A stretch of DNA of 64,000 nt, from assembly GCF_963853765.1 (NCBI RefSeq), contig NC_088855.1:39246001-39310000 (forward strand), given 5' to 3'. The stretch comes from Magallana gigas (Eukaryota). Every line of letters begins with the position of its first letter. Position 1 is the first letter of the stretch. Below the pieces are notes generated by a model. It was given only the letters and a program-made list of their open reading frames with translations, ran no database searches and was not told the DNA's origin. The position numbers were made by a program, and so were the translations under genes. Below are positions 41,706 to 55,834 of this stretch, piece after piece.

Positions 41706-42370
41706 ACAGGAAATTGGGGAGAGATGGATATGAAACTCATAGGGGTTATTTTTCTTTTTGATTTTCTTGATTGATTATATTACGGCAAAGTTGTTCTTGT
41801 TGTATGTTCTAGAGTCGAGAATGTCATTAATGAAACAGTATGTTTAATTCTTGCATTGGGATGCTTACAAAAATACAGGCATCATTTCGGAATTTGTTTT
41901 TTAGCTAGCATACGACCGTTTCGAACATATTTTTATAAATCATTAATAAATGCCATGTCAGTTATCTAGGAAAAAAAACTACGTACATAATACTGGCACT
42001 AACCAGATTGCTGAATGTGCAGTGTGTATGTTTATGTTGCCTTGTTAGTACAAAATAATCATATTTCTTTTTAAGTCAAGTACATTCACAAGGCCACGTT
42101 GAGTGGCTCCTTTGCTTTACGCATGTAATATTTTTCTCTCTAGATAACAGTTCAAATTTTCTCAATCTAATTAAAATTAGAACTTCCATCCGCTCCCCGG
42201 TTTTCGATATGTCGCGTGGAAGATCTAACAACATCCCATTAAGGGTCACGTCAGAGTTCAATATGAATACATTATCTTATTTTTTAACAAGCCAATCAAA
42301 ATATGGATCAACCTTTTCAAGCACCCAATCAGAAAGCGTCTTTCTTGCTTGATTCGTTTATGCTTACAAG

Positions 42371-44684
42371 ATGGCGGCGTCCACGATAGAAGCGTTAGTT
42401 TGCGATTTATTACCAGTTTTTGGAGTCGATGCGTTAAAGGACGAACAAAAAACAATACTACAGTGTCTGATGAATAAAACGGACTGCATGGCAGTTCTTC
42501 CCACGGGCTATGGAAAGTCCCTGCCTTATCAGATGTACAGTTTGGTAAACCGACGACTGACGAGTGATAAAGAAATCGTTCTCGTGTGCTGTCCACTTGT
42601 GGCCTTAATGCAAGATCAAGTAGAAAAAATGTCAAAGATTCCAGGTGTGAAATCAGCCTACGCAGGTATTTACCTTTCTATTTTTTTTTTCAGCAATAAT
42701 GTTGCAAAAATCACTTGCTACATGTATGGGTAATAATACCGTTGATATAAAACAATGATACTTGGATTGTAAACATATAAAAGAAAAGCTGTTAAGGTTA
42801 AGTTTTGATATGATTACAAATAATTCAGAAATTGTGAGATAACTGAATGTAGAATTTTAGGCAATTTAGTGTCATCTCCTATAAGTTTGCCAAAGAGGCC
42901 CCTATATCAACATTTGATAGAAAATTTCTGTTTCCATGCAATCTTATCTTTAAACAAAAAGATTAATTATATGGCCAAGTTTAAATATTCTTCTCACTCT
43001 TTGAAAGCATGACTAATATTATAACAAGGTAATTTTTCACTCGGACTATTTGTTTACAAGTCAGTTTGTTTACGAGTTGACTGTAATTCGTAATATTTAC
43101 TCATTTGTACTTATCAAATTCCATGGCATTTTCTTTTCCCGTTAGGTTCATGTCCACAGAGTGACATTGAAATAAAGGAAGGCAAAGTGGACATCATATA
43201 TGCATCGCCAGAAACCTTGGTAGGTGATCCAGAATGGAGGGCAAGCATCCAAAATTTGCCAGTGTCTGTGCTTGTCATAGACGAATTCCACACAATTGCT
43301 ACATGGTATGTTTAATTAAAAATACAGGTATTATTTATCAAGTTCCATACTGAACTATGTTCTCTGAAGATACTGAATAACTGATGACAAAAACAAAAAA
43401 AATATAATTTTTTTTGTCACTCATTTGTCTGGAACATGTCATTGTCAAAAACTATATGGATTCAGGAATAATGCATGTGCAAACACCAAAATTATCAGTG
43501 ATAAAAATGTTCACATCTCAAAAGCTGAGCTACAGATTTTATACCAGTGTTTATATATATAATTGTTCATATTAAATTTCTTCAGTTAGTCCAAATCAAT
43601 TAAGAAAAAAATTATCTACTTAATGGAAATGTCCCTCCATATAAATTAGCATTGGCACCATTAATTACTGGTATTTGATTAATCTTCATACTGCACAATA
43701 TATTGATAAATATACCTGGTTTCAAAGTTTTGTTGAAATCTTTTTTACAGGGGGGACGATAGTGAAAGTCAAGGCAAGGAAACATTTCGTAAATGGTTTA
43801 ATGATGTTGGAGAATTACGCTCCCTTTACCCAAGATCATCAGTGTTGGCACTCAGTGCAACGTGCACTATAAAGATTAGAAAGAGGGTGATGAAGGTACT
43901 GCATTTAGCTGACAATTTCAAAGAGATAGTTATTTCTCCAAATAAAACAAATATTAGAATATCAGTAGCCAAAGTATCAAACACTGTAGAAACAGCAATG
44001 CATTGGCTTATCGAGGGGCTGAGTGAACTCAAAGAAAAATTTCCAAGAACGATTATATATTGCACCTCGATAAAGGATGTCTCTGAAATTTATTCATATG
44101 TTACAAAGGAATTACCTTTCACTTCAACTTTACTGGAAATGTTTCATTCTGAAACCCCACAGACCAAAAAACAAAGAATCCTGGAAAGTCTAACAAACAT
44201 TACAGGGGAAATCAAAATTGTTATTGCCACTAGCGCATTGGGCATGGGATTGGATGTGAAAAATTGTCACAGTGTCGTATTATTTGGACCACCTGTGCAA
44301 ATTGTTGACCTGCTTCAAGAAATCGGACGAGTCGGCAGGGATGGAGGACCTTCAGTTGCTATTATTTTATATAACTGTTATCATCTTAGAAAACTCTCAT
44401 CAGATGTGAAAGAAATTTTGAAATCAACTGACTGTAGGAGAATTTCATTGATGCAGTGTTTTTTAAAGCCAGAAGCTATTGCATTGCTTAAAGAGAATGA
44501 AAGCAGGAAACACACATGTTGTGATTTATGTAAAACTAAATGCAAGTGTCAGAACTGTAGTATGCTTCCACTGGAAGAAATCTATTACCATTCATCGGTA
44601 AGCGTCAATCAGAAAGACAGTGATATTTCTGACAGTGATACAGAGGAGTACTTCTCCAATGATGAAAATTTAGAATTGTCTTGA
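42371..44684 (+). CDS. RecQ-like SF2 DExH helicase carried by the transposon, 462 aa
   Basis: Exons 42371-42665, 43146-43305, 43751-44684 (1389 nt, open). Motifs LPTGYGKS (I), CPLVALMQDQ (Ia), VIDEFH (II), LSAT (III), IIYC (IV), ATSALGMGLD (V), QEIGRVGRDG (VI), CRR...CCDLC Zn-binding region; no HRDC or long N-terminus. Confidence 0.93.
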
Positions 44685-45096
44685 TCAAATAAAAATTGAA
44701 CTTTTTACTGCTTTTATTTATATGCGAGAAAAATTACTTAAATTGATTTTTGCTAAAATATCAAACTTTTTAAACAGTAATTAGGCTGTCCAAAGTCAAT
44801 TCTATATTTATTGTCACCTTCGAAATACATTACCTACTGTACAAGGAAGATTAAAGTTGGACTTATAATAAGTTATTTTTCAAAATGGCAATTTCTTCAT
44901 GTTTGTTGGTGATGTTCAACAAAAAATTATCTTTGGACAGCCTTAGTGAGGGTGAATTAAAGGCAAGAATCTTGAAAAACATCCACAGAAAAATTTTCAC
45001 TGTGACATTATTTACTTTAGATGACTGTTCAATATTAACATGACATGGATGATAATTCCTGTACTACAATAATACAATGTACAATCATTATGTTAA

Positions 45097-45438
45097 GGTA
45101 CTTCACTACACCAAGACTTGTACTTTTCAAGACGCTACGTCACAAGATGGCGATTTAAATGTTTCGTTAAACTGTTTGTATCAATTGACTCAGATGTATA
45201 TCGTAATAGCTCAGTGGTTAAAGTATCAGGCTTGTGAACCGCAGGTCATGAACTCGAATCCGACTGGGGCTTTTGTTTATGTTTACTGAATGAAATTTTT
45301 GAAAATGTCATTTTTTATCTAAAATTGCACATTTTTTCGCCTATTTGACACATATACTTCTTATCCATCATGCTATCTATCATAATCAAGTAATTTTCTG
45401 GTGAATTAAGAAACTACTTCAAGGTGTAGTGAGGTACC
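45097..45438. mobile_element. 342-bp Kolobok-like MITE nested between the helicase and transposase 3' ends, carrying a tRNA-derived core
   Basis: ttaa|GGTACTTCACTACACC ... GGTGTAGTGAGGTACC|ttaa; internal TAGCTCAGTGG (A box) and GAACTCGAATCC (B-box-like) followed by TTTT at ~45205-45275. Confidence 0.8.
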
Positions 45439-45443
45439 TTAAG

Positions 45444-48400
45444 CTAAATATGATGACTTCGGAGTCGTCGGTATGGTAAGCTTGGCTTGTGGCGATGAAT
45501 CATTTCTGGAAGTCCAGAGTAACAGTTTTCAAAAGGGTTTTTGTCATTAACAAGGCATCTGCATTGTAATTGACGTTTTGGAATGTTACACAGTACATTA
45601 TGTTTCACCAAATCTAAGGCAACTTTTTTAACATCATCATGGTAATTTGGTAAGTGATGAAATCCTTTCCTTGGGTTCATATCGCTGATTGACTCCAAAT
45701 GTTGCACAAATCCAACTAAATGCGGATATTCCTTTGAATGCTCTATAATACTTTTTTTAGTCTGATGTCCTGAACAGGCTATTTTGCTTTCCCGGTTTAA
45801 TATCTCGAGGTATTCATCCAAAGCTATGTTATTGTTTCGCCCTCCTTGTACATTGACAAATCGATTAGCAACCAAACGCTCACATTGCTCCTCTTCAAGT
45901 ACTCCAGATGTCAAAGCTGATAAATGAATAGAACCAATCACATACTTGACTTTTCTTGTTCTGTTATAAATAGGTAGTTCATACTTAGTAGAACGTACTG
46001 AACGCTCACCGTCTCCCATATCTACAGCAGTGTCAAGGTTTTTGTGCAGCAAGGTTAACTTAAACAGCAGAGAAATGTAGTCTTGTAATTCATCCGAGTC
46101 ATTTTTTTTCTTTGGCTTTTTATCCTTCATAACAACGAAATTATGAACTTTAGATTCATGCGACTTTAATGAACCTATAAAAGCATAATCCTTTTCACAA
46201 AAGTGACACTTAATCCGACCACCTTCACAAATGTTTTCAGTCCAGTAATTTTCAGGGTGATTGGGATCTGATAGTACTTCTCTAAGGGATTGACAAATAT
46301 CTGTGCCATTGTCAAAAAACCACTTCTGTACAATTTCTTCACAAATGTCATTCAACCAATGCAATTTCTGCTCCTCTGTAAAATTCTGAAAATGTTCTGG
46401 TACAGGAATATCGCTTTCAAAATCCTTTAACCCAAAATGATTATAGAAAAGTGCCATGATTATACCATCCAAAACAGTATAGTATAACATTTTGTGTGGT
46501 CGATATGAATTCTTTACTTTTCCTTTGACATTTCTCATGTTAAGGACATTTCTATAATAATAAACAGTTCCAGGATCACTTGCACTTTCTGTACTGAATG
46601 TCATCTTGTGTATTGCCTAAAATTTAAATATATCAATTTAAATATTGAATGCTTGGTAATTAATTTTGGAAACAATGGTATAATAATATCAAAATTAAGA
46701 ATGATTTAGCTAACCATACACAAATATTTCTTAAAATTTTAATGTGAAAAAATTGCCTTCAACCATAGCAAAAATTGTACCTCTAAGAAATTCATGAGAC
46801 GGTGGAAATCCTCTGTCTTAGAAATAAACCCCTCTAGCCTCTCTTTCGCAGAACCTGCATTGCTCATTGCTTGTTGAGCTCCCTGCACTCGTTCGTCGGT
46901 GAGTCGGTCTCCTGAAAATGAATAAGATATTATGCAATATGCATACAACTTATAAATCAGTAGCCAACTGTGGACCATCTGAAAGAATTTTCACTATTCT
47001 GAGATTCATATATCAGTGTACCTGAGATCCATAAATAGATGGATTGCATTAATGTTAATTTCTCACAGGTAAGATATACATGATATTAAGTAGGATATAA
47101 GCTATAGATATACTCCCATAACAAGATCTGATATCAGTTTTTAGGCTTGAATACAGGGTTGGATGGGTTCTAAATTTCATTTCTTTGAAAACAAGCTTAT
47201 ATTCATAGTATTGAAGATGTGACATTGTGTAAATATTTCTACTTGTAGAGGTGTTAACTATTAAATTAAAAAAAAAATATAAAAGACAAACCTCCAAAAA
47301 ATACTGGCTCAACAATTTCATCATCTTTCATTGGCACATACATGTTTGTTAGCTTCTTCAGCAACTGGACAACATCAGCAGTTTTTGTTTCGTTACAGTC
47401 ATACAATCCAAGTGGATACTGCAAAATAAAATGCATACAATGTACATATAGTTATAAGAATGATATTGGATTATAAACATTAATGAGGTACTTACTTATC
47501 ATAAGCAATATTTATATAACAATCTATAATCTAAAATATGGCCAATTATTAGTTTAAGCTAATTTCCGAGACGTGATTATGCTCATAAGCTTTCGGTAGG
47601 TACATATTATGGGATGGGATGGTCATACAAACAATGCTGGCACATATTAATTTGCTCCTTCTTTTAACTACTTTATAATTCAATCTAAATCACCTGAGTG
47701 GTCTTCAAACCAGCAAAGCGACTGTATTTGTGCTCAAGATGATCAGGATATATTTTGTGGAACAAATTTCCAATCTGTGGTATGTTTTCAATGACAGAAC
47801 GTGCACATAGAAAGGTCATTTCCTTTAACAGAAGCTCCTGTTCTTGAGTTGATGGAATGAATTTCAGATTGTCAAGTTCTGGTCTATTCTCTGTCAGGGA
47901 GTTTGTTGAAGATGCTGGTACAACCCGATCCACAATGGCATACATATTAAAGAGATGAAGCGAGAGGGTTTTTCTATCTGAAGTTCTATAAGATGGTAGT
48001 ATATTCTTATCCCAGTTATCGCCTATGATCTGGAACTTCGTCTGATCACCTTCTGCCCATGAGTCTCTAATAGAAACCAAATCCATGTCTAAATTGTCTT
48101 GCCAGCTGATAAGTTTCTTGTGAACGGTTTGTGGGTGGACACTAAATCCAATTTTAGACAACCTCTCAATATCCTGTTATGAAGATTAAAAAGAAATATA
48201 GATTAAAATTTGCACAGCATGGCTCCTGCAAATTAAAAATGTTATGCTAGTTCAGCACAAACCTGATGCATACTTTGTATATCCTAGATATAAATTACCA
48301 ATTTTAAAATGATATGGTTGGCAGAAAACCACAATTACAACTGCAATTTAAAATAGACTTAGTAAATTATATACATGTACATGTATAACTTACCCGTTGC

Positions 48401-51400
48401 GTGCAACCTCCATGTGTAAGTATAAACCCGGTAAAGTAATGCATCAATGACATCTCCTGATTTCTACCATGTAGTGCCACTGCAGCAGCTAACATGATAT
48501 GAACAAAGGGTTTACTGGGAGGTGCAGGCGGGATGTCACATACAACAGATGATAGTAATTCAAGAAGTGAAGGACAGGTTCTGCTCAAGTCATCATACAT
48601 ATCTTTCCAATGGAAGCCAAAGAAGTTATGATAGTCTTTTCTCTGTAACAGGGAATTTCCTCTCTTGCATGTTCTTTGAGACTCCTCCTTCAGAATTTGC
48701 CCTGCACCATGAATTACTGCTGACTTATTTGCTTTGCAAATACTATCAACTATGATTTTTTCCACACCTTTTCCTCTGATGAATGCTTTACATATAGTTT
48801 TGTGTGCATCATTTGTGATTTCAACACTCTTCTTTCCACTGGCATAATACACGGACACCTATAAACGCAAATATCAAAATCTAAAGTTAACAAGGTCAAC
48901 ACTTGTCAGTACTGTTTGAATTTTTGAATTTAAACTGATCATTAATATCAGCATCAAATTTTCATTGGAGTATCTCAGTTGTAAGTGTTCATCATTACAC
49001 AAAATAATTTAACATTTTCTTAAAGCTCCTTCATTTTTTCTAATGCCAATTCATTTGTCCTTTTATATACTTAAAAAGCTGATTTAGACAAAAGTACATT
49101 ACAATATTCAGTTACTTGCATTGGCAAGGTTACTTGTTGGAAATTTAATACTGGTAGACATTGGTTGGTCATTATGTTGATTTTAACCTGTACAACAAAA
49201 TCAGAAACAAAAACAAAGAAATAATTTAACAGTTCAATAAAACAAAAATCAATTAAGGACTATAAGGAACAATGAAAATTTATACATGTTTACATTTGAG
49301 TCATGACTGCTTAATATAAAATTTGATATTTAAACCAACAAGTAGTTTGTTGGCAATAAGAATTTTACATTTTTTTTTTTTTTACAATATTTGAATCAGT
49401 GTGACAAATGTCAGATAGAAAATAAAACATGTATAAATCAGAATTTTTTTTACAATAGTCTCCTCTAGTAATATACCGTAATCTCAGAGAGATTTTGACT
49501 GAAAAATTTTGACCGATCCGTCAAAATCTTTTAGTCTCAACAAATCTTAATGAGATTACTAGTGAAGGTTTAAGTTTAAAGTTTTCCAAAGATTTCTGTC
49601 ATTGGAAAACTTTTAAAAACAACTTTGGAAGTCTTTTGTAAAATAAAAAAAAAAATTGTATGAATGAATTGAATACCGATACATAAATTTGAAGTAGGTG
49701 GAAAATGACCGACTACCTACATAGATATTCAAAAGAGCAGTGATTATCTTTCTGGGTGTATTCATTTATTGACATTGGAACCCTTAAGTATTTATTTTAT
49801 GGTATATATCGGTACACAAAACATACTGTTAAAGGAATGTTCAACACAGTTAATTAACAAGTTCCCTACATTTCTACATAACATTCAAATAAAACAGGTG
49901 TAATCTAAGACTAATCGAAACAAACGAAATTGAAAAAAAAAAAAATTTGTAACATTGCACCTCAACTTTCCCATCTAGACAACACTGGTCCGATTTTAGT
50001 GCGCTTGAGAATAAGGCCCTCTTAGAGGATTTAGGAACTGATTCTGTTACAATTCATCATAAATTTATCAATACAATAAAAATATTTTCTATCATGATTT
50101 GGGGCAGTAAATACATAATTAGCATTATAACATTTTCAACACTTAACAACTACTAAATGTTTTGAATTAACCTCAATCCGTCTAATAGTGTGGAATGAAT
50201 GTCACTAAGATCTTAAGATCGCTTAAACCCTTGTATTTCCAAACTAGATGTAACATCGATGAAGAAGAAAAATCCAGAATAAATTGATAATACAAGATAA
50301 AAATTATTTAAAACAAATATTTTATTTTAGATCGCTACTCACCAACGACCAATTCTCTCCAAGTACCATTTCCTGCCAGTAAATTGTTGCGTCAAAAATA
50401 AAAGAGGTGGCAAGAATTGGTACTTGGTGAGAATTGATTGTCTGCCAGTATATTCAAATTAAATTTATGATTTATTTGTGTTTCATGTTTACATGTACTT
50501 ACAACAACAACAACATATCACTCAGTTAAAATTATATAACGAGTACTTCATGTGAAATATGGTCATATTTTATTATTTCATACATTCATAACTTCAATTT
50601 TTTAAAACAAATCCAACATACCTTGTTTCTCCTTTGGTGCAATAGGGATATTGGTGGATGCACTAAATTCCGGTGGACAGGTGACTGGTAGAGACAGCTG
50701 TGAATATAATGTAGTAAATCATAAAATCTTTAATCATACATGTCATACATGTATAACTTCAAATAGAGTAGATAAATAACCAAATCCTATTGATTAAAAC
50801 ACAGTTGATATACATCTGTATCTGTATTTACCGGGTAGTTTAATATATGGACAATACAGTTAATTCTTTCAGACATAGGCGTCAGAACAGGGGGTGCATT
50901 TTGGACAACTATATTCCTGGTTATTTTTTGTTTAGTTTTTTTGCTTGTCAACATTCCTGATAAGCCTAGCCCTTCACTTTCAATTTGCTTCCGACGCCAA
51001 TGTCAGATTAAAACGGCAAAATCTTCATTATCTTCATATTGTAAACAATAAAGTGAATGTCTACCTGTTAATTGATATAGAGGAATTTCGAATTACTTCC
51101 TACATCCCATAACAGTATGACAGCAGACTTACCTCAGTTTTCTGCCATTCTGTTGTATTCGTCAGGTCCTTAAATGGCGCTATTTGCACGAGCTTTCGAT
51201 ATGATAGGTTCACCAATGTCTGCTTTTTTGAAGATGGCATGGACGGGCTTCTCAGCATTCGTTTACTTATGGATTTTCTCCTAGGTGAGGGCAGTTGTAG
51301 CATGTGTGATTTCATTGTGGTTTCTGCAATTTCGCGGAATCTCTGCTTGGTTATCTGGTTTTTTTCTTCCGTCTTTAAAATAGACTCTACTGATCTGTAA

Positions 51401-51621
51401 CATTTTTTGCAAACGCCAGCATTCGTTGCTACATCAATGTCTGGCAGTCCGGTAATCTTCTTTACATTGTCGACTCTTTCCTTATTTAATTTTAACTTAA
51501 TATCAAAAAACTTGTGAATTTTCTCTCCACCATCCGTTTTTTCAATTTGAATGAAGGAAAATCCGCATAGAATGCAAACGTCTGACAAAACACACGTTTT
51601 TCGAGGTGTTGATGCAGCCAT
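45444..51621 (-). CDS. Academ-type transposase, ~1007-1030 aa
   Basis: Phase-consistent exons 51621-51133, 50697-50622, 50043-49961, (optional 49187-49134 or 49116), 48858-48394, 48173-47694, 47418-47292, 46911-46781, 46616-45444; no stops. N-terminal C-x2-C...C-x2-C; acidic motifs IIGDNWD, FGGDRLT, EDFHRL, ALDEYLEILNR; inserted C2H2 finger CHFCEKDYAFIGSLKSHESKVH. Confidence 0.82.
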
Positions 51622-52200
51622 TTTTGTAATTCGGAACACATCGGGTATGTACTAAAATACATAGAATGAGAAAACTTCCGAACGCAATGACAGAGAACCA
51701 GTCTCTACCGGACACAAGAAAGTCTACTGAGATTTGATTGGTTAATACAGAGTTCACCAGAACATGACCTCTTACGGAATGTTGTTAGATCTTCCACGCG
51801 ACATATCGAAAACCGGGGAGCGGATGGAAGTTCTAATTTTAATTAGATTGAAATTTTCTTTTATTTAAACCATAATTCATTTTAAAGATAAAGAGGTTCG
51901 AATATAATCTATGACATGATTTTCAAAATTGTTGAATGCAGACATATAACAGGTACAAATTACAACAATGATCCTTTGATTAGAACAGATTCACAAATAC
52001 AATATAAATGATAATGATTAAGGCAAGCAACAAAATCGCATTTCATTTATTTGTTCTTTTGAATCCAAAAAGACATAATTCAAAATTAAATTCTGCATAC
52101 ATGTAATAAAACGTTAAAATCAATAACAAATATGGCCGACGAAACAATTCTAATCCGGTTCCAAAATAAAGATCTGTAAAAATCAAAGAATGTTCAAATT

Positions 52201-54399: not shown

Positions 54400-55834
54400 C
54401 TAGCGGAAAAAAGAAACTGTGCATTATAAAATTTAGTATAATTTTTCTATATCCATTGCTTGTATTTATAAAATTTAAACAATCGATAATGGTAATGTTT
54501 TTGACAATATCGGATGGTAACCGTCCGGGTGCACGGACTTTTTCATGGTTAGTGAGCACCTGTTGTTTATTGAAGAATTTGTACGCACGAGTTTTATGGG
54601 ACAATACTGTTTGGAATAAGAACTGTAAAGGATTTGTTTAAACCTTTTTTTGTTAAGGAAATCACTTTAGTTTCAACAAAATTTACCCCTATGTCATGCC
54701 ACGACTCAACGAAAACCAACGTAATCGTACTGTTGAGATGCTGCAAGCTGGAATGGCACAAAATACTGTAGCAAGACAGGAACACAATCCAGTCATTATG
54801 GAGACGTTTTCAACAATCTGGCAACATTCAGGATCGACCGCGCTCTAGGCGACCTCGTGTGACGTCACGTCAACAGTACAACCACATTAGACTTGTGCAT
54901 TCAGACAGCAAGTTTGACTGCCCGTAGCATTCCAAGGCTTCGACCAATTAGTCCAAGAACTGCGTAATCGTCTGCGTGAGCAAAACATCAGACCAAGACG
55001 TCCAGCGGTGCGCCCAGTACTGCTTCAACGTCATCATCATAGGACTGGGCCAATATTCTATTCACTGATGAATATAGATTTCATTTGGATAGCAGTGACG
55101 GCCGTTGTAGGGTGTATCGTCGCGGTGGGGAGCGTTACCAGGACGCTTGTGTTGTGCAACGTCGACAATTTGGTGGAGGTAGCGTTATGGTGTGGGGTGG
55201 AATATCAGCACGTGGAAGGACCCCTCTACAAATTCTCAATGGAAATCTCACCGGCGTACGCTATCGAGATGAAATTTTTCAGCGTCATGTGATACCCTTC
55301 ATACAGAGACATCAAAATCACATCACTCTGCAGCAAGACAACGCAAGGACACACGTTGCACGTATAGTCAGGGACTTGTTTGTTCAACAGAATGTCGATG
55401 TTTTGCCTTGGCCAGCTGTTTCCCCCGATTTGTCGCCGATCGAGCACGTCTGGGATGAAATGGAAAGACGTTTACGCCGTTTACCAAACCAGCCAATGAC
55501 TTTGGCTGATTTAGGCCAGGCTTTAACCAACATCTGGAACAACATCCCTCAAGCATTTTTGAACACTTTAGTGGCATCAATGAGGCGTCGCTGTCAAGCA
55601 TCTGTGAACGCAGATGGTGGTCACATGCGTTATTAATTTTGTTAATTCAATTTCAAATAACAGTGACTTTCGAGTGTGCTGAAATTGACGTTATTCGACG
55701 TTGACATTAATGTGTTATGAGATGTTGTTACGGATACATGTGTTCACAGTATTACAAAAAATAAAATTTGTTCATTGTAATTTTTAATTTTTTTTTCATA
55801 TATCAAATAATGCTCAGTTTCTTTTTTCCGATAG
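54400..55834 (+). mobile_element. Tc1-family (DD34E) DNA transposon, full-length but with a frameshifted transposase
   Basis: TA-flanked ~30-bp TIR CTAGCGGAAAAAAGAAACTGTGCATTAT / ATAATGCTCAGTTTCTTTTTTCCGATAG; transposase 54696-55636 with MPRLNENQRNR, DRPRSRRPRVTS, FTDEYRF, VMVWGGI, QQDNARTH, SPDLSPIEHVW (34 residues between D and E); indels in the HTH half. Confidence 0.92.

What the first reader, a model, noticed from the sequence alone, without database searches (positions are those of the whole stretch)
42154..51859. Apparently intact, possibly active helicase-encoding (AcademH-type) DNA transposon
Perfect 72-bp TIRs, a perfect 9-bp TSD, and two uninterrupted multi-exon ORFs (a 462-aa RecQ-like helicase with all motifs; a ~1000-aa transposase with DNxD, GDxLT, DxxH and D-E-x-x-E-x-x-N acidic motifs) point to a young autonomous copy. 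The lineage has been described computationally, but to my knowledge the role of the helicase in transposition is not established. It might act in donor-site repair, end unwinding or replicative transposition. An intact copy is an experimental entry point. An annotator would probably miscall these as host RecQ/WRN-like and uncharacterised genes.
Basis: partly seen in the sequence, partly recalled or inferred. Interest (0 to 1): 0.8.

Follow-up and report, generated by a model that had tools for sequence, protein, structure and literature searches.

The report
Oyster AcademH helicase-carrying DNA transposon
This is a young, transcribed copy of an already described kind of jumping gene (AcademH) in an oyster genome that carries its own RecQ-like helicase, but the transposase message as actually spliced contains one premature stop, so "fully intact" is only partly true.

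Summary
The structure is real. The element spans 42163-51850 (9,688 bp), with perfect 72-bp terminal inverted repeats (TIRs) and a perfect 9-bp target-site duplication (TSD), AAATTTTCT.

The plus strand encodes an intact three-exon, 462-aa RecQ-like helicase. The minus strand encodes an eight-exon DUF6589 transposase whose splice junctions appear in RNA contigs from two studies and not in a DNA run.

With those junctions the 1,002-codon frame holds one in-frame TAA at codon 190. It separates a ZAD-like zinc module (189 aa) from the catalytic core (805 aa from the next ATG). Skipping exons 2 and 3 would give a clean 954-aa frame, but I did not observe that form.

A model of a 60%-identical relative folds as an RNase H-like DDE transposase, closest to Hermes, P element, ISCth4 and RAG1.

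Related elements in Saccostrea and Ostrea share the terminus CAATCT(A/G)ATTAAAAT, the tail-to-tail helicase gene, and 9- or 10-bp TSDs. So do many MITE-like derivatives. This matches the published AcademH signature.

Verdict: a new member of a known kind. This scan has already reported AcademH copies elsewhere in this genome. Autonomy is unproven.

The most novel lead is that stop-bearing exons sit between the N-terminal module and the core in several families.

The parts
42154..42162 (.). left copy of the 9-bp target-site duplication, AAATTTTCT
42163..42234 (+). left terminal inverted repeat: 72 bp, perfect, starting CAATCTAATTAAAATTAGA
   Evidence: The terminus is conserved in L003, L004 and more than 120 metagenome contigs.
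42292..42329 (+). two CCAAT motifs (42292-42296 and 42325-42329) in the left subterminal region, upstream of the helicase start; promoter-like, inferred
   Evidence: CCAAT(C/G)AAAT recurs at both ends of the Saccostrea and Ostrea relatives.
42371..42665 (+). helicase exon 1: ATG, then motif 0, Walker A (PTGYGKS) and motif Ia
43146..43305 (+). helicase exon 2: motif II, DEFH
43751..44684 (+). helicase exon 3: motifs III-VI, a RecQ-type zinc-binding Cys cluster, and the stop; AATAAA at 44688
45444..46616 (-). transposase exon 8: inserted C2H2 finger (C749-H770), DMGDG, D879/E880/E883/N886, and the stop at 45446-45444
46781..46911 (-). transposase exon 7: GGDRLT with D570, and D603-x-H605
47292..47418 (-). 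transposase exon 6
47694..48173 (-). transposase exon 5: GDNWD with D418 and D421 on the first strand of the RNase H-like core
48394..48858 (-). transposase exon 4: the start of the conserved core (VSVYYASGKK...); many relatives' annotated proteins begin here
49120..49187 (-). transposase exon 3 (68 nt), followed by a GC-AG intron; holds the in-frame TAA (49185-49183) and the next in-frame ATG (49161-49159)
50622..50697 (-). transposase exon 2 (76 nt): linker
51133..51621 (-). transposase exon 1 coding part: ATG at 51621, then a ZAD-like C4 zinc module (C16, C19, C71, C74) and a long helix. RNA contigs continue upstream to at least 51837.
51737..51741 (-). CCAAT motif in the right subterminal region, upstream of the transposase start; promoter-like, inferred
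51779..51850 (-). right terminal inverted repeat: 72 bp, perfect
   Evidence: The end at 51850 joins several different flanks in runs X13, X15, X17 and X21.
51851..51859 (.). right copy of the 9-bp target-site duplication, AAATTTTCT

Best explanation
This is a young copy of a bivalve AcademH-lineage DNA transposon. Each end carries a 72-bp TIR, followed by a promoter-like subterminal region with CCAAT boxes and an ATG in the shared context TTACAA(G/A)ATGGC. The two genes are therefore read inward and end tail to tail.

The minus-strand gene encodes a DDE transposase with an RNase H-like core. The core has a large helical insertion that contains a C2H2 finger. The likely catalytic residues are D418 or D421, D570, and E883 or D879.

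Inferred mechanism: the transposase binds the conserved CAATCTAATTAAAATTAGA termini, cuts the element out, and joins it to target DNA with a 9-10-bp stagger.

The plus-strand gene encodes a minimal RecQ-type helicase, made of the two RecA-like lobes and the zinc subdomain. It has no detectable winged-helix or HRDC part. Inferred role: it processes the branched or nicked DNA made at the transposon ends or at the gapped donor or target. That is the role the XPG nuclease would play in the sister lineage AcademX.

In this family the transposase mRNA includes two small exons that place a TAA between an N-terminal ZAD-like zinc module, probably for dimerisation, and the core. Full-length transposase can arise only if those exons are skipped. 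Otherwise the family depends on a core-only protein or on transposase supplied by related elements.
For: Shown:
- Perfect TIRs and TSD.
- Helicase: an intact spliced ORF, confirmed by P0087. Its best solved relatives are WRN, RecQ, RECQ1 and BLM, and all motifs are present.
- Transposase splicing: every junction is present in RNA contigs of runs X15 and X17, and none in DNA run X13.
- Transposase family: Pfam DUF6589 is the only family hit.
- Fold: the AlphaFold2 (AF2) model of P0333, 60% identical to ours, has pLDDT 90.4. Its best solved matches are Hermes (Z 9.3), P element transposase (9.0), ISCth4 (8.0), RAG1 (7.5) and Transib.
- Near-invariant D, D, D-x-H and D/E columns.
- Gene arrangement: the convergent transposase and helicase pair occurs in 4 of 4 fetched loci, from Patella, Saccostrea cucullata, S. 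echinata and Ostrea edulis.
- The S. echinata element has 103-bp perfect TIRs and a 9-bp TSD. The O. edulis element has a 10-bp TSD. Both share our terminal sequence.
- Of 13 MITE-like two-ended elements with the same 19-nt terminus, 7 have a perfect 9- or 10-bp TSD and 4 more have one mismatch.
- Literature: AcademH makes 9- or 10-bp TSDs and AcademX 3- or 4-bp (PMC10045372). Academ is amplified in bivalves (PMC10294476).
- Multicopy and young: the TIR end joins several different flanks. Internal k-mer depth is about 46, against 15.5 for the flank contig in X13. Contigs from other runs differ by only a few letters per kilobase.
- Premature stop.
- ZAD-like fold of the exon-1 product.
Against: - No Repbase or Dfam Academ consensus could be compared, and Kojima 2020 was not held. 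Superfamily membership therefore rests on architecture, TSD length and the literature statement, not on direct homology to a named Academ transposase.
- No fungal relatives appeared among the named hits.
- The fold-match Z scores (7-9) are moderate.
- The catalytic residues are assigned from conservation and secondary structure only.
- The in-frame TAA argues against a functional full-length transposase from the observed mRNA.
- The exon-skipped form was not seen.
- Excision, or an empty site at this locus, was not demonstrated.
- The helicase's role is entirely inferred.
Confidence: 0.85

Rival explanations
1. The family is no longer autonomous. The TAA at codon 190 is a recent nonsense change in a coding linker. 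Copies like this one spread only because related AcademH families with the same 19-nt termini supply transposase in trans, as they must for the many MITE-like derivatives.
For: - The TAA is the only stop in 1,002 codons, and exons 2-3 are otherwise open. My estimate of the chance of that is about 0.03, from a per-codon stop frequency of about 0.07 in AT-rich sequence.
- The same letters occur in RNA contigs X15 and X17 and in DNA contig X13.
- Ostrea edulis and Saccostrea RefSeq models fuse the zinc module and the core in one ORF: P0331, P0332, P0336 and P0361.
- The terminus is shared by many families and by MITEs.
- TIR k-mer depth in X13 is about 30 times the internal depth.
Against: - The helicase, and the other 1,001 codons of the transposase, are undamaged.
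- An in-frame ATG follows the stop by 8 codons.
- Several other families also show stops just before the core exon, some followed directly by an ATG. That looks like design rather than decay.
Confidence: 0.35
2. The split is functional. Alternative splicing of stop-bearing exons, or a second start codon, yields a ZAD-like N-terminal protein, a core-only protein, or the full fusion. This would regulate transposition in the way intron retention does for the Drosophila P element.
For: - Five mRNA-derived or RefSeq models from different families have in-frame stops shortly before the core exon. They are ours, S. echinata L003/P0324 (a 15-nt mini-exon GATTAGCTTGATATG), L007/P0338, L128/P0333 and L129/P0328.
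- In L003, L129 and L005 an ATG directly precedes the core exon.
- Skipping exons 2 and 3 here is frame-neutral and gives a clean 954-aa ORF.
- O. edulis P0331 splices the zinc exon directly to the core exon.
- The ZAD fold implies a dimerising module that could act alone.
Against: - No exon 1 to exon 4 junction was seen in three RNA runs.
- Contigs drop rare isoforms, and the raw-read run gave only 43 reads.
- Some 'M' starts in Logan proteins are artefacts of bacterial-type start calling; L128 starts at GTG and L006 has no ATG.
- The stop-bearing segments are not homologous between families.
Confidence: 0.3
3. This is a pair of host genes (a RecQ/WRN paralogue and an uncharacterised DUF6589 gene), or a domesticated transposase locus, and not a mobile element.
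For: Public annotations name the relatives WRN-like, RecS, RecQ-like or 'uncharacterized protein'.
Against: - The element has perfect 72-bp TIRs and a 9-bp TSD.
- The same TIR end is joined to several different flanks in four runs.
- Relatives in other genera lie between their own TIRs and TSDs.
- Many MITE derivatives exist.
Confidence: 0.02
4. It belongs to another DDE superfamily that also makes 9-10-bp duplications or also carries a helicase, such as MuDR/MULE or KolobokH.
For: - MuDR also makes 9-10-bp TSDs.
- ISCth4, an IS256-type relative of MULEs, is among the fold matches at Z 8.0.
- KolobokH and Kolobok-1_CCri carry RecQ helicases (PMC9587614).
Against: - There is no Pfam MULE, Transposase_mut, hAT, THAP or P-element hit, even at E = 1; only DUF6589.
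- From my own knowledge, not checked in a paper here, Kolobok makes 4-bp TTAA duplications.
- Hermes and P element match at least as well as ISCth4.
Confidence: 0.05

Closest known systems
AcademH lineage of the Academ superfamily (Kojima 2020, Mob DNA 11:15; cited in PMC10045372 and PMC10799480)
   Same: TIR-bounded DNA transposon with 9- or 10-bp TSDs, a DDE transposase and a separately encoded RecQ-like SF2 helicase. It is found in marine invertebrates, and Academ is especially abundant in bivalves (PMC10294476).
   Different: Nothing defining differs. Three features were seen here; I could not check them against the original paper, which was not held:
- a ZAD-like N-terminal module;
- stop-bearing small exons between that module and the core;
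- a 19-nt terminus and start-codon context conserved at both ends.
AcademX lineage
   Same: The same transposase superfamily, according to the literature.
   Different: AcademX fuses an XPG nuclease and makes 3- or 4-bp TSDs (PMC10045372). This element has a helicase, a 9-bp TSD and no XPG domain.
Drosophila P element transposase (PDB 6pe2, 6p5a)
   Same: RNase H-like DDE core with a large insertion domain (Z 9.0 over 363 residues). A possible parallel is a truncated N-terminal product made by alternative splicing.
   Different: No THAP domain and no P-element Pfam match. The TSD is 9 bp, whereas P elements make 8 bp (my own knowledge). P carries no helicase. The splicing parallel is a hypothesis only.
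hAT transposase Hermes (PDB 8sjd, 4d1q, 2bw3)
   Same: It is the best fold match (Z 9.3, 302 residues; Foldseek probability 0.96-0.97). [quoted passage not shown]
   Different: Sequence identity is about 12%. There is no hAT dimerisation-domain hit. The TSD is 9 bp rather than 8 bp (my own knowledge).
KolobokH and Kolobok-1_CCri (PMC9587614)
   Same: DDE transposons that also carry a RecQ helicase, in one case on the complementary strand.
   Different: They belong to a different transposase superfamily. In KolobokH the helicase is fused downstream of the transposase, and KolobokH is known only from fungi.
ZAD (zinc-finger-associated domain) of Grauzone, M1BP, Serendipity-delta, Pita and ZNF276
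   Same: The exon-1 product is predicted to form a C4 zinc knuckle followed by a long helix. All six ZAD structures take ranks 1-6 of 48,161 chains (Z 6.4-4.1, against 3.6 for the next row).
   Different: There is no Pfam zf-AD hit. The model confidence is moderate (pLDDT 68). Here the domain heads a transposase rather than a C2H2 transcription factor.

Membership tests
AcademH | Terminal inverted repeats bounding the element | tested here: met
   72/72 complementary at 42163-42234 and 51779-51850.
AcademH | Target-site duplication of 9 or 10 bp (PMC10045372) | tested here: met
   - 9 bp here.
- 9 bp in S. echinata L003 and 10 bp in O. edulis L004.
- 7 perfect and 4 near-perfect 9- or 10-bp TSDs among 13 MITE-like relatives.
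AcademH | A separate gene for an SF2, RecQ-like helicase inside the element | tested here: met
   A 462-aa ORF with DEAD and Helicase_C domains. Its best solved relatives are WRN, RecQ and RECQ1. The motifs and Zn cluster are present. The same convergent pair occurs in 4 of 4 related loci.
AcademH | Transposase homologous to the Academ DDE transposases of Repbase | not testable with these tools
   No Repbase or Dfam sequences were at hand, and Kojima 2020 and Yuan & Wessler 2011 were not held. Indirect evidence only: Pfam DUF6589 is the sole hit, and the fold is RNase H-like.
AcademH | DDE/RNase H-like catalytic core with conserved acidic residues | tested here: met
   The model of the 60%-identical P0333 has pLDDT 90.4 and a beta1-3/alpha/beta4/alpha/beta5 order. 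It matches Hermes, P element, ISCth4, RAG1 and Transib. D220/D223, D372 and D678/E682 are invariant or nearly so in 42 sequences; they correspond to D418/D421, D570 and D879/E883 here. Metal binding and catalysis were not tested.
AcademX | XPG nuclease domain and 3-4-bp TSD | tested here: not met
   No XPG hit in any exon product, and the TSD is 9 bp.
MuDR/MULE | MULE or Transposase_mut catalytic domain | tested here: not met
   No such Pfam hit at E up to 1 for P0331, P0333 or our exon 8. The TSD length alone would fit.
Kolobok / KolobokH | Kolobok-type transposase, with the RecQ helicase fused downstream of the transposase | tested here: not met
   The helicase is a separate convergent gene. 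The TSD is 9 bp; the Kolobok TTAA TSD is from my own knowledge.
RecQ helicase family (the helicase gene) | SF2 motifs 0-VI plus the RecQ zinc-binding subdomain | tested here: met
   FG...Q, PTGYGKS, CPLVALMQDQ, DEFH, SAT, ATSALGMGLD, QEIGRVGRDG and C-x20-CCDLC-x3-C. PDB E-values are 2.6e-16 to WRN and 4e-14 to E. coli RecQ.
RecQ helicase family (the helicase gene) | RQC winged-helix and HRDC domains of the long cellular RecQ proteins | tested here: not met
   Only DEAD and Helicase_C were detected. The protein ends about 50 residues after the zinc cluster. So it is a minimal RecQ core.
ZAD domain (exon-1 product) | C4 zinc-coordinating fold followed by a long helix | tested here: inconclusive
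   Structure search: six ZAD entries rank 1-6, with Z 6.4-4.1, rmsd 2.4-4.1 Å and 59-83 aligned residues. Foldseek probability is 0.97. Against this, there is no Pfam zf-AD hit and the model pLDDT is 68.

The most novel reading that the evidence does not exclude
Bivalve AcademH elements may not make their transposase as one fixed protein. A ZAD-like dimerisation module (exon 1) is separated from the catalytic core by small stop-bearing exons. Splicing or start-site choice would then decide between a module-only protein, a core-only protein and the full fusion. That would be a built-in regulatory switch of the P-element type. It is coupled to a mirror-symmetric design in which both ends carry the same promoter-like motifs and start-codon context for the two convergent genes.
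Probability: 0.25. Interest if true: 0.55.

Novelty: new member of a known kind. Interest (0 to 1): 0.3.

Why it matters
AcademH was described computationally. As far as I know, no one has shown how it moves or what its helicase does. This copy gives precise, RNA-supported gene models, the conserved terminal sequence, the candidate catalytic residues and a defined set of natural protein forms: 189, 805 and 954 aa, plus the 462-aa helicase. That is the parts list a transposition assay needs.

It also warns that 'intact' copies judged from sequence alone can hide a premature stop once real splice sites are used. And it warns that bivalve genome annotations list many TE-borne helicases as WRN, RecQ or RecS genes.

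In itself the element is an ordinary member of a family that is abundant in bivalves, and this scan has already reported it elsewhere in this genome.

Tried and rejected
- **Papers not held.** Kojima 2020 and Yuan & Wessler 2011 could not be read. The TSD rule therefore comes second-hand from PMC10045372.
- **DUF6589 literature.** One unrelated mention only.
- **Exact 34-nt TIR search in metagenome contigs.** No hit. The 19-nt terminus gave more than 120 hits.
- **Foldseek on the 801-aa model.** No match reached E <= 0.001. The verdict rests on the coherent list of transposases in the re-alignment.
- **Pfam on exons 1, 4, 5 and 6.** Nothing meaningful.
- **Alternative acceptors inside exon 3 that would avoid the TAA.** None is in frame; I checked the sequence by hand.
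- **Other exon-skipping patterns.** Exon 2 joined to exon 4, or exon 1 joined to exon 3, breaks the frame or hits a stop.
- **Empty site.** An X13 DNA contig aligns to the right flank from exactly 51851 and then runs on for 43 letters unlike the TIR (table 8).
- **Host-gene reading.** Rejected because of the TIRs, the TSD and the multiple flanks.
- **This family's own proteins.** Neither the 805-aa nor the 954-aa protein was found in the protein collection.
Full report
**Observation**

The window has no N runs. The element runs from 42163 to 51850 (9,688 bp). Its first and last 72 bases are perfectly complementary, and similarity falls off after that (90 nt at 93%). The nine bases AAATTTTCT stand directly outside both ends, at 42154-42162 and 51851-51859. 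Neither feature can be a chance match. No other copy or fragment of the element is in the window. The flanks hold no long ORF apart from a Tc1/mariner-like DDE_3 remnant at 55085-55636. G+C content is about 33% both inside and outside the element.

**Helicase gene (plus strand)**

- Pfam finds DEAD and Helicase_C in the ORF pieces.
- A transcript-derived protein in the public collection, P0087 (62 member sequences), matches three blocks at 95-100% identity. This fixes the splice sites.
- The exons 42371-42665, 43146-43305 and 43751-44684 have GT-AG borders and give 462 aa with no stop.
- All RecQ-type motifs and the Cys cluster of the RecQ zinc subdomain are present.
- The best solved relatives are WRN (E 2.6e-16), bacterial RecQ, RECQ1 and BLM.
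- No winged-helix or HRDC part was detected, so this is a minimal RecQ core.
- Its closest database relatives are bivalve and gastropod proteins that annotators named WRN-like, RecS, RecQ-like or Q1-like.

**Transposase gene (minus strand)**

The large ORF pieces hit only Pfam DUF6589. Homologues fixed the five 3' exons.

I laid one DNA run and three RNA runs on 46010-52009.

- RNA contigs from two different studies (X15, X17) carry seven joints: 46616-46780, 46911-47291, 47419-47693, 48173-48393, 48859-49119 (a GC-AG intron), 49188-50621 and 50698-51132.
- None of these joints is present in the DNA run X13. The gene is therefore transcribed and spliced.
- One 3,912-nt RNA contig joins all eight exons.
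- The raw-read run X21 gave only 43 reads, so it adds little.

The exons are 51621-51133, 50697-50622, 49187-49120, 48858-48394, 48173-47694, 47418-47292, 46911-46781 and 46616-45444.

**The break in the transposase frame**

These exons keep a single frame of 1,002 codons, but codon 190 is TAA, at 49185-49183 (the second codon of exon 3). The RNA contigs and the DNA contig of X13 show no difference at these positions (table 3), so the stop belongs to the family and not only to this copy.

- Upstream of the stop lies a 189-aa ORF.
- The next in-frame ATG, codon 198 at 49161-49159, opens an 805-aa ORF that holds the whole conserved core.
- Leaving out exons 2 and 3 (144 nt together) gives a clean 954-aa frame. 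No such joint was seen.
- Exons 2-3 are otherwise open across 47 codons. From a per-codon stop frequency of about 0.07 in AT-rich sequence, I estimate the chance of that at about 0.03. This suggests a recent nonsense change in a coding linker.

The claim of 'two uninterrupted ORFs' is therefore right for the helicase only.

**Relatives**

Word-based and exhaustive searches find hundreds of DUF6589 proteins.

- About 50-64% identical: oysters, mussels, scallops, clams, pearl oyster, limpet and abalone.
- About 24-28% identical: amphioxus, acorn worms, sea cucumber and a jellyfish.
- No fungal protein was among those named.

Four fetched loci all show the transposase followed by a convergent helicase gene. 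They are from Patella caerulea, Saccostrea cucullata, S. echinata and Ostrea edulis. The exon pattern of the core is the same.

- The S. echinata element has perfect 103-bp TIRs and a 9-bp TSD, ATCAAGCCC.
- The O. edulis element has a 10-bp TSD, ACCCTTTTGC.
- Both begin CAATCT(A/G)ATTAAAAT(T/A)AGA, like ours.

An alignment of the six ends shows further shared blocks: AAGATCT..ACA.CCCGT..GGTCA, CCAAT(C/G)AAAT, and an ATGGCNGC start context for both genes.

The 19-nt terminus occurs in more than 120 metagenome contigs. Of 13 short two-ended elements (57-318 bp), 7 have perfect 9- or 10-bp duplications and 4 more have one mismatch.

This matches the published rule that AcademH makes 9- or 10-bp duplications and AcademX 3- or 4-bp (PMC10045372). 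It also matches the reported amplification of Academ in bivalves (PMC10294476).

**Fold**

Our spliced protein cannot be passed to the tools by reference. I therefore modelled P0333, which is mRNA-derived, 801 aa and 60% identical, using 42 relatives. The model has pLDDT 90.4 and pTM 0.86.

- Foldseek's best hits are Hermes chains (probability 0.96-0.97, E about 2e-3).
- The re-alignment lists Hermes (Z 9.3), P element transposase (9.0), ISCth4 (8.0), PFV integrase, RAG1 (7.5), Transib, TnsB and the Prp8 RNase H domain. These span model residues of about 150-720.
- The Z scores are moderate, but the list is coherent.
- The strand and helix order around the conserved D (GDNWD), D (GGDRLT) and D/E (LDEYxExxN) columns is that of an RNase H-like core with a large insertion, which here includes a C2H2 finger.

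The assignment of catalytic residues remains an inference.

**N-terminal module**

The exon-1 product is conserved from oysters to mussels and a limpet. Its pattern is TPRK..LS..C.LCGFSF...KL.L..ER...GVC.KC.RS.E..LK. Its model is of moderate confidence (pLDDT 68, core 70-94).

An exhaustive structural search of 48,161 chains puts the six ZAD domains on ranks 1-6. Grauzone scores Z 6.4 at rmsd 2.5 Å over 72 residues, and the next unrelated row scores 3.6. ZAD domains are dimerisation modules, so this part probably pairs transposase subunits. That is an inference, and Pfam zf-AD does not hit.

**Is the split a defect or a design?**

RefSeq models in O. edulis and Saccostrea fuse the module and the core: P0331 (983 aa), P0332, P0336 and P0361. 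In O. edulis the module exon splices directly to the core exon...LKQ|VYVHYPSGKK.

Other families behave differently.

- In S. echinata the RefSeq protein P0324 starts at an ATG that ends a 15-nt mini-exon, GATTAGCTTGATATG, with an in-frame TAG before it. The module ORF lies 3 kb upstream in the same element.
- mRNA contig L007 has the module and the core in one frame, separated by a segment with three stops.
- L128 and L129 have in-frame stops 17 and 1-8 codons before the core exon.

Five families thus show stops just upstream of the core exon, and three of them place an ATG right there. Some 'M' starts in Logan-derived proteins are artefacts of bacterial-type start calling.

I cannot decide between repeated decay and a conserved way of making separate or alternatively spliced products. 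I give the two readings 0.35 and 0.3.

**Age, copies and expression**

Twenty runs from nine studies hold the stretch, under two species labels and as 'oyster metagenome'.

- In DNA run X13 the internal contigs have k-mer depth 41-47, the flank contig 15.5, and the TIR about 1,400. This suggests a few full-length copies and many TIR-bearing derivatives.
- The end at 51850 continues into several different sequences in X13, X15, X17 and X21 (table 7). These are other insertion sites.
- Contigs from other runs differ from this copy by a few letters per kilobase.
- An X13 contig that matches the right flank stops matching exactly at 51851 and then runs on for 43 unlike letters. This would fit an empty allele, but I could not verify it.
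- The 3,912-nt RNA contig extends about 1,465 nt beyond 46010, to about 44545. That is past the helicase stop, so the two convergent transcripts probably overlap at their 3' ends. Poly(A) signals lie at 44688 (+) and at 44713/44807 (-). This too is an inference.

**Mechanism**

Shown: two inward-facing, spliced genes between conserved ends; a DDE-type fold; 9-10-bp duplications across the lineage.

Inferred:
- cut-and-paste transposition with a 9-10-bp staggered target cut;
- dimerisation through the ZAD-like module;
- a helicase that handles the nicked or branched intermediates at the ends or the gap left behind, which is the job that XPG would do in AcademX.

Nothing here tests the helicase's role.

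**Comparison and verdict**

This is a member of the AcademH lineage in every feature I could test. The one feature I could not test is direct homology to the Repbase consensus. It is not AcademX, MuDR, Kolobok, hAT or P.

Earlier notes of this scan report several AcademH copies elsewhere in this same oyster genome, including one of identical length about 82 kb upstream. The find is not new for the scan or for the literature.

Interest is low to moderate. Its value lies in the exact gene models, the caveat about the premature stop, the ZAD-like module and the recurrent stop-bearing exons.

Read laying was given 6,000 letters.

Noticed in passing
window 55085-55636 (+): A 183-aa ORF hits Pfam DDE_3 (E 4.9e-13). 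It is a Tc1/mariner-type transposase remnant about 3 kb from the element.
   Followed up: partly
window 50810-51009 (intron 1 of the transposase): In DNA run X13 this stretch has k-mer depth about 850, against about 45 for the rest of the element. RNA contigs break here (loose ends at 50874 and 50979). It is a highly repeated segment of unknown kind, and no TIR or direct repeat was found around it.
   Followed up: partly
L018, L060, L074, L081, L106, L107, L116 and other loci: Short elements of 57-318 bp consist of little more than two inverted ends beginning CAATCTAATTAAAATTAGA, with 9- or 10-bp duplications. They form a large MITE-like population sharing the AcademH terminus in marine metagenome assemblies (OBLZ, OCZB, JYMV records).
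   Followed up: partly
window 42363-42385 and 51629-51607; L003 and L004 ends: Both genes start in the same context (TTACAA(G/A)ATGGCNGC, encoding MAAS/MAAP), about 210-230 nt inside each end. This holds in three oyster genera. The inverted repeat therefore extends, in degenerate form, to the start codons.
   Followed up: partly
window 44545-45443: An RNA contig of run X17 runs from the transposase 3' UTR into the end of the helicase coding exon. The convergent transcripts probably overlap and could form double-stranded RNA.
   Followed up: no
window 44640-44968: Protein P0097 (93% identical) joins 44244-44639 to 44909-44968. This points to an alternative 3' intron, and so a different C-terminus, for the helicase in a related copy.
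   Followed up: no
L004 19107-19243: The right end of the Ostrea edulis element carries an internal duplication of about 33 nt of its TIR (CTTTGATCCGCTCCGTTATTGTTATGTCGCTAC occurs twice).
   Followed up: no
L001 5572-7467 and 8001-11955: In Patella caerulea the annotators called the ZAD-like module (204 aa) and the core (752 aa) as two separate genes. A piggyBac-type DDE_Tnp_1_7 gene lies just beyond the helicase.
   Followed up: partly
This could be local hopping or a duplication.
   Followed up: no
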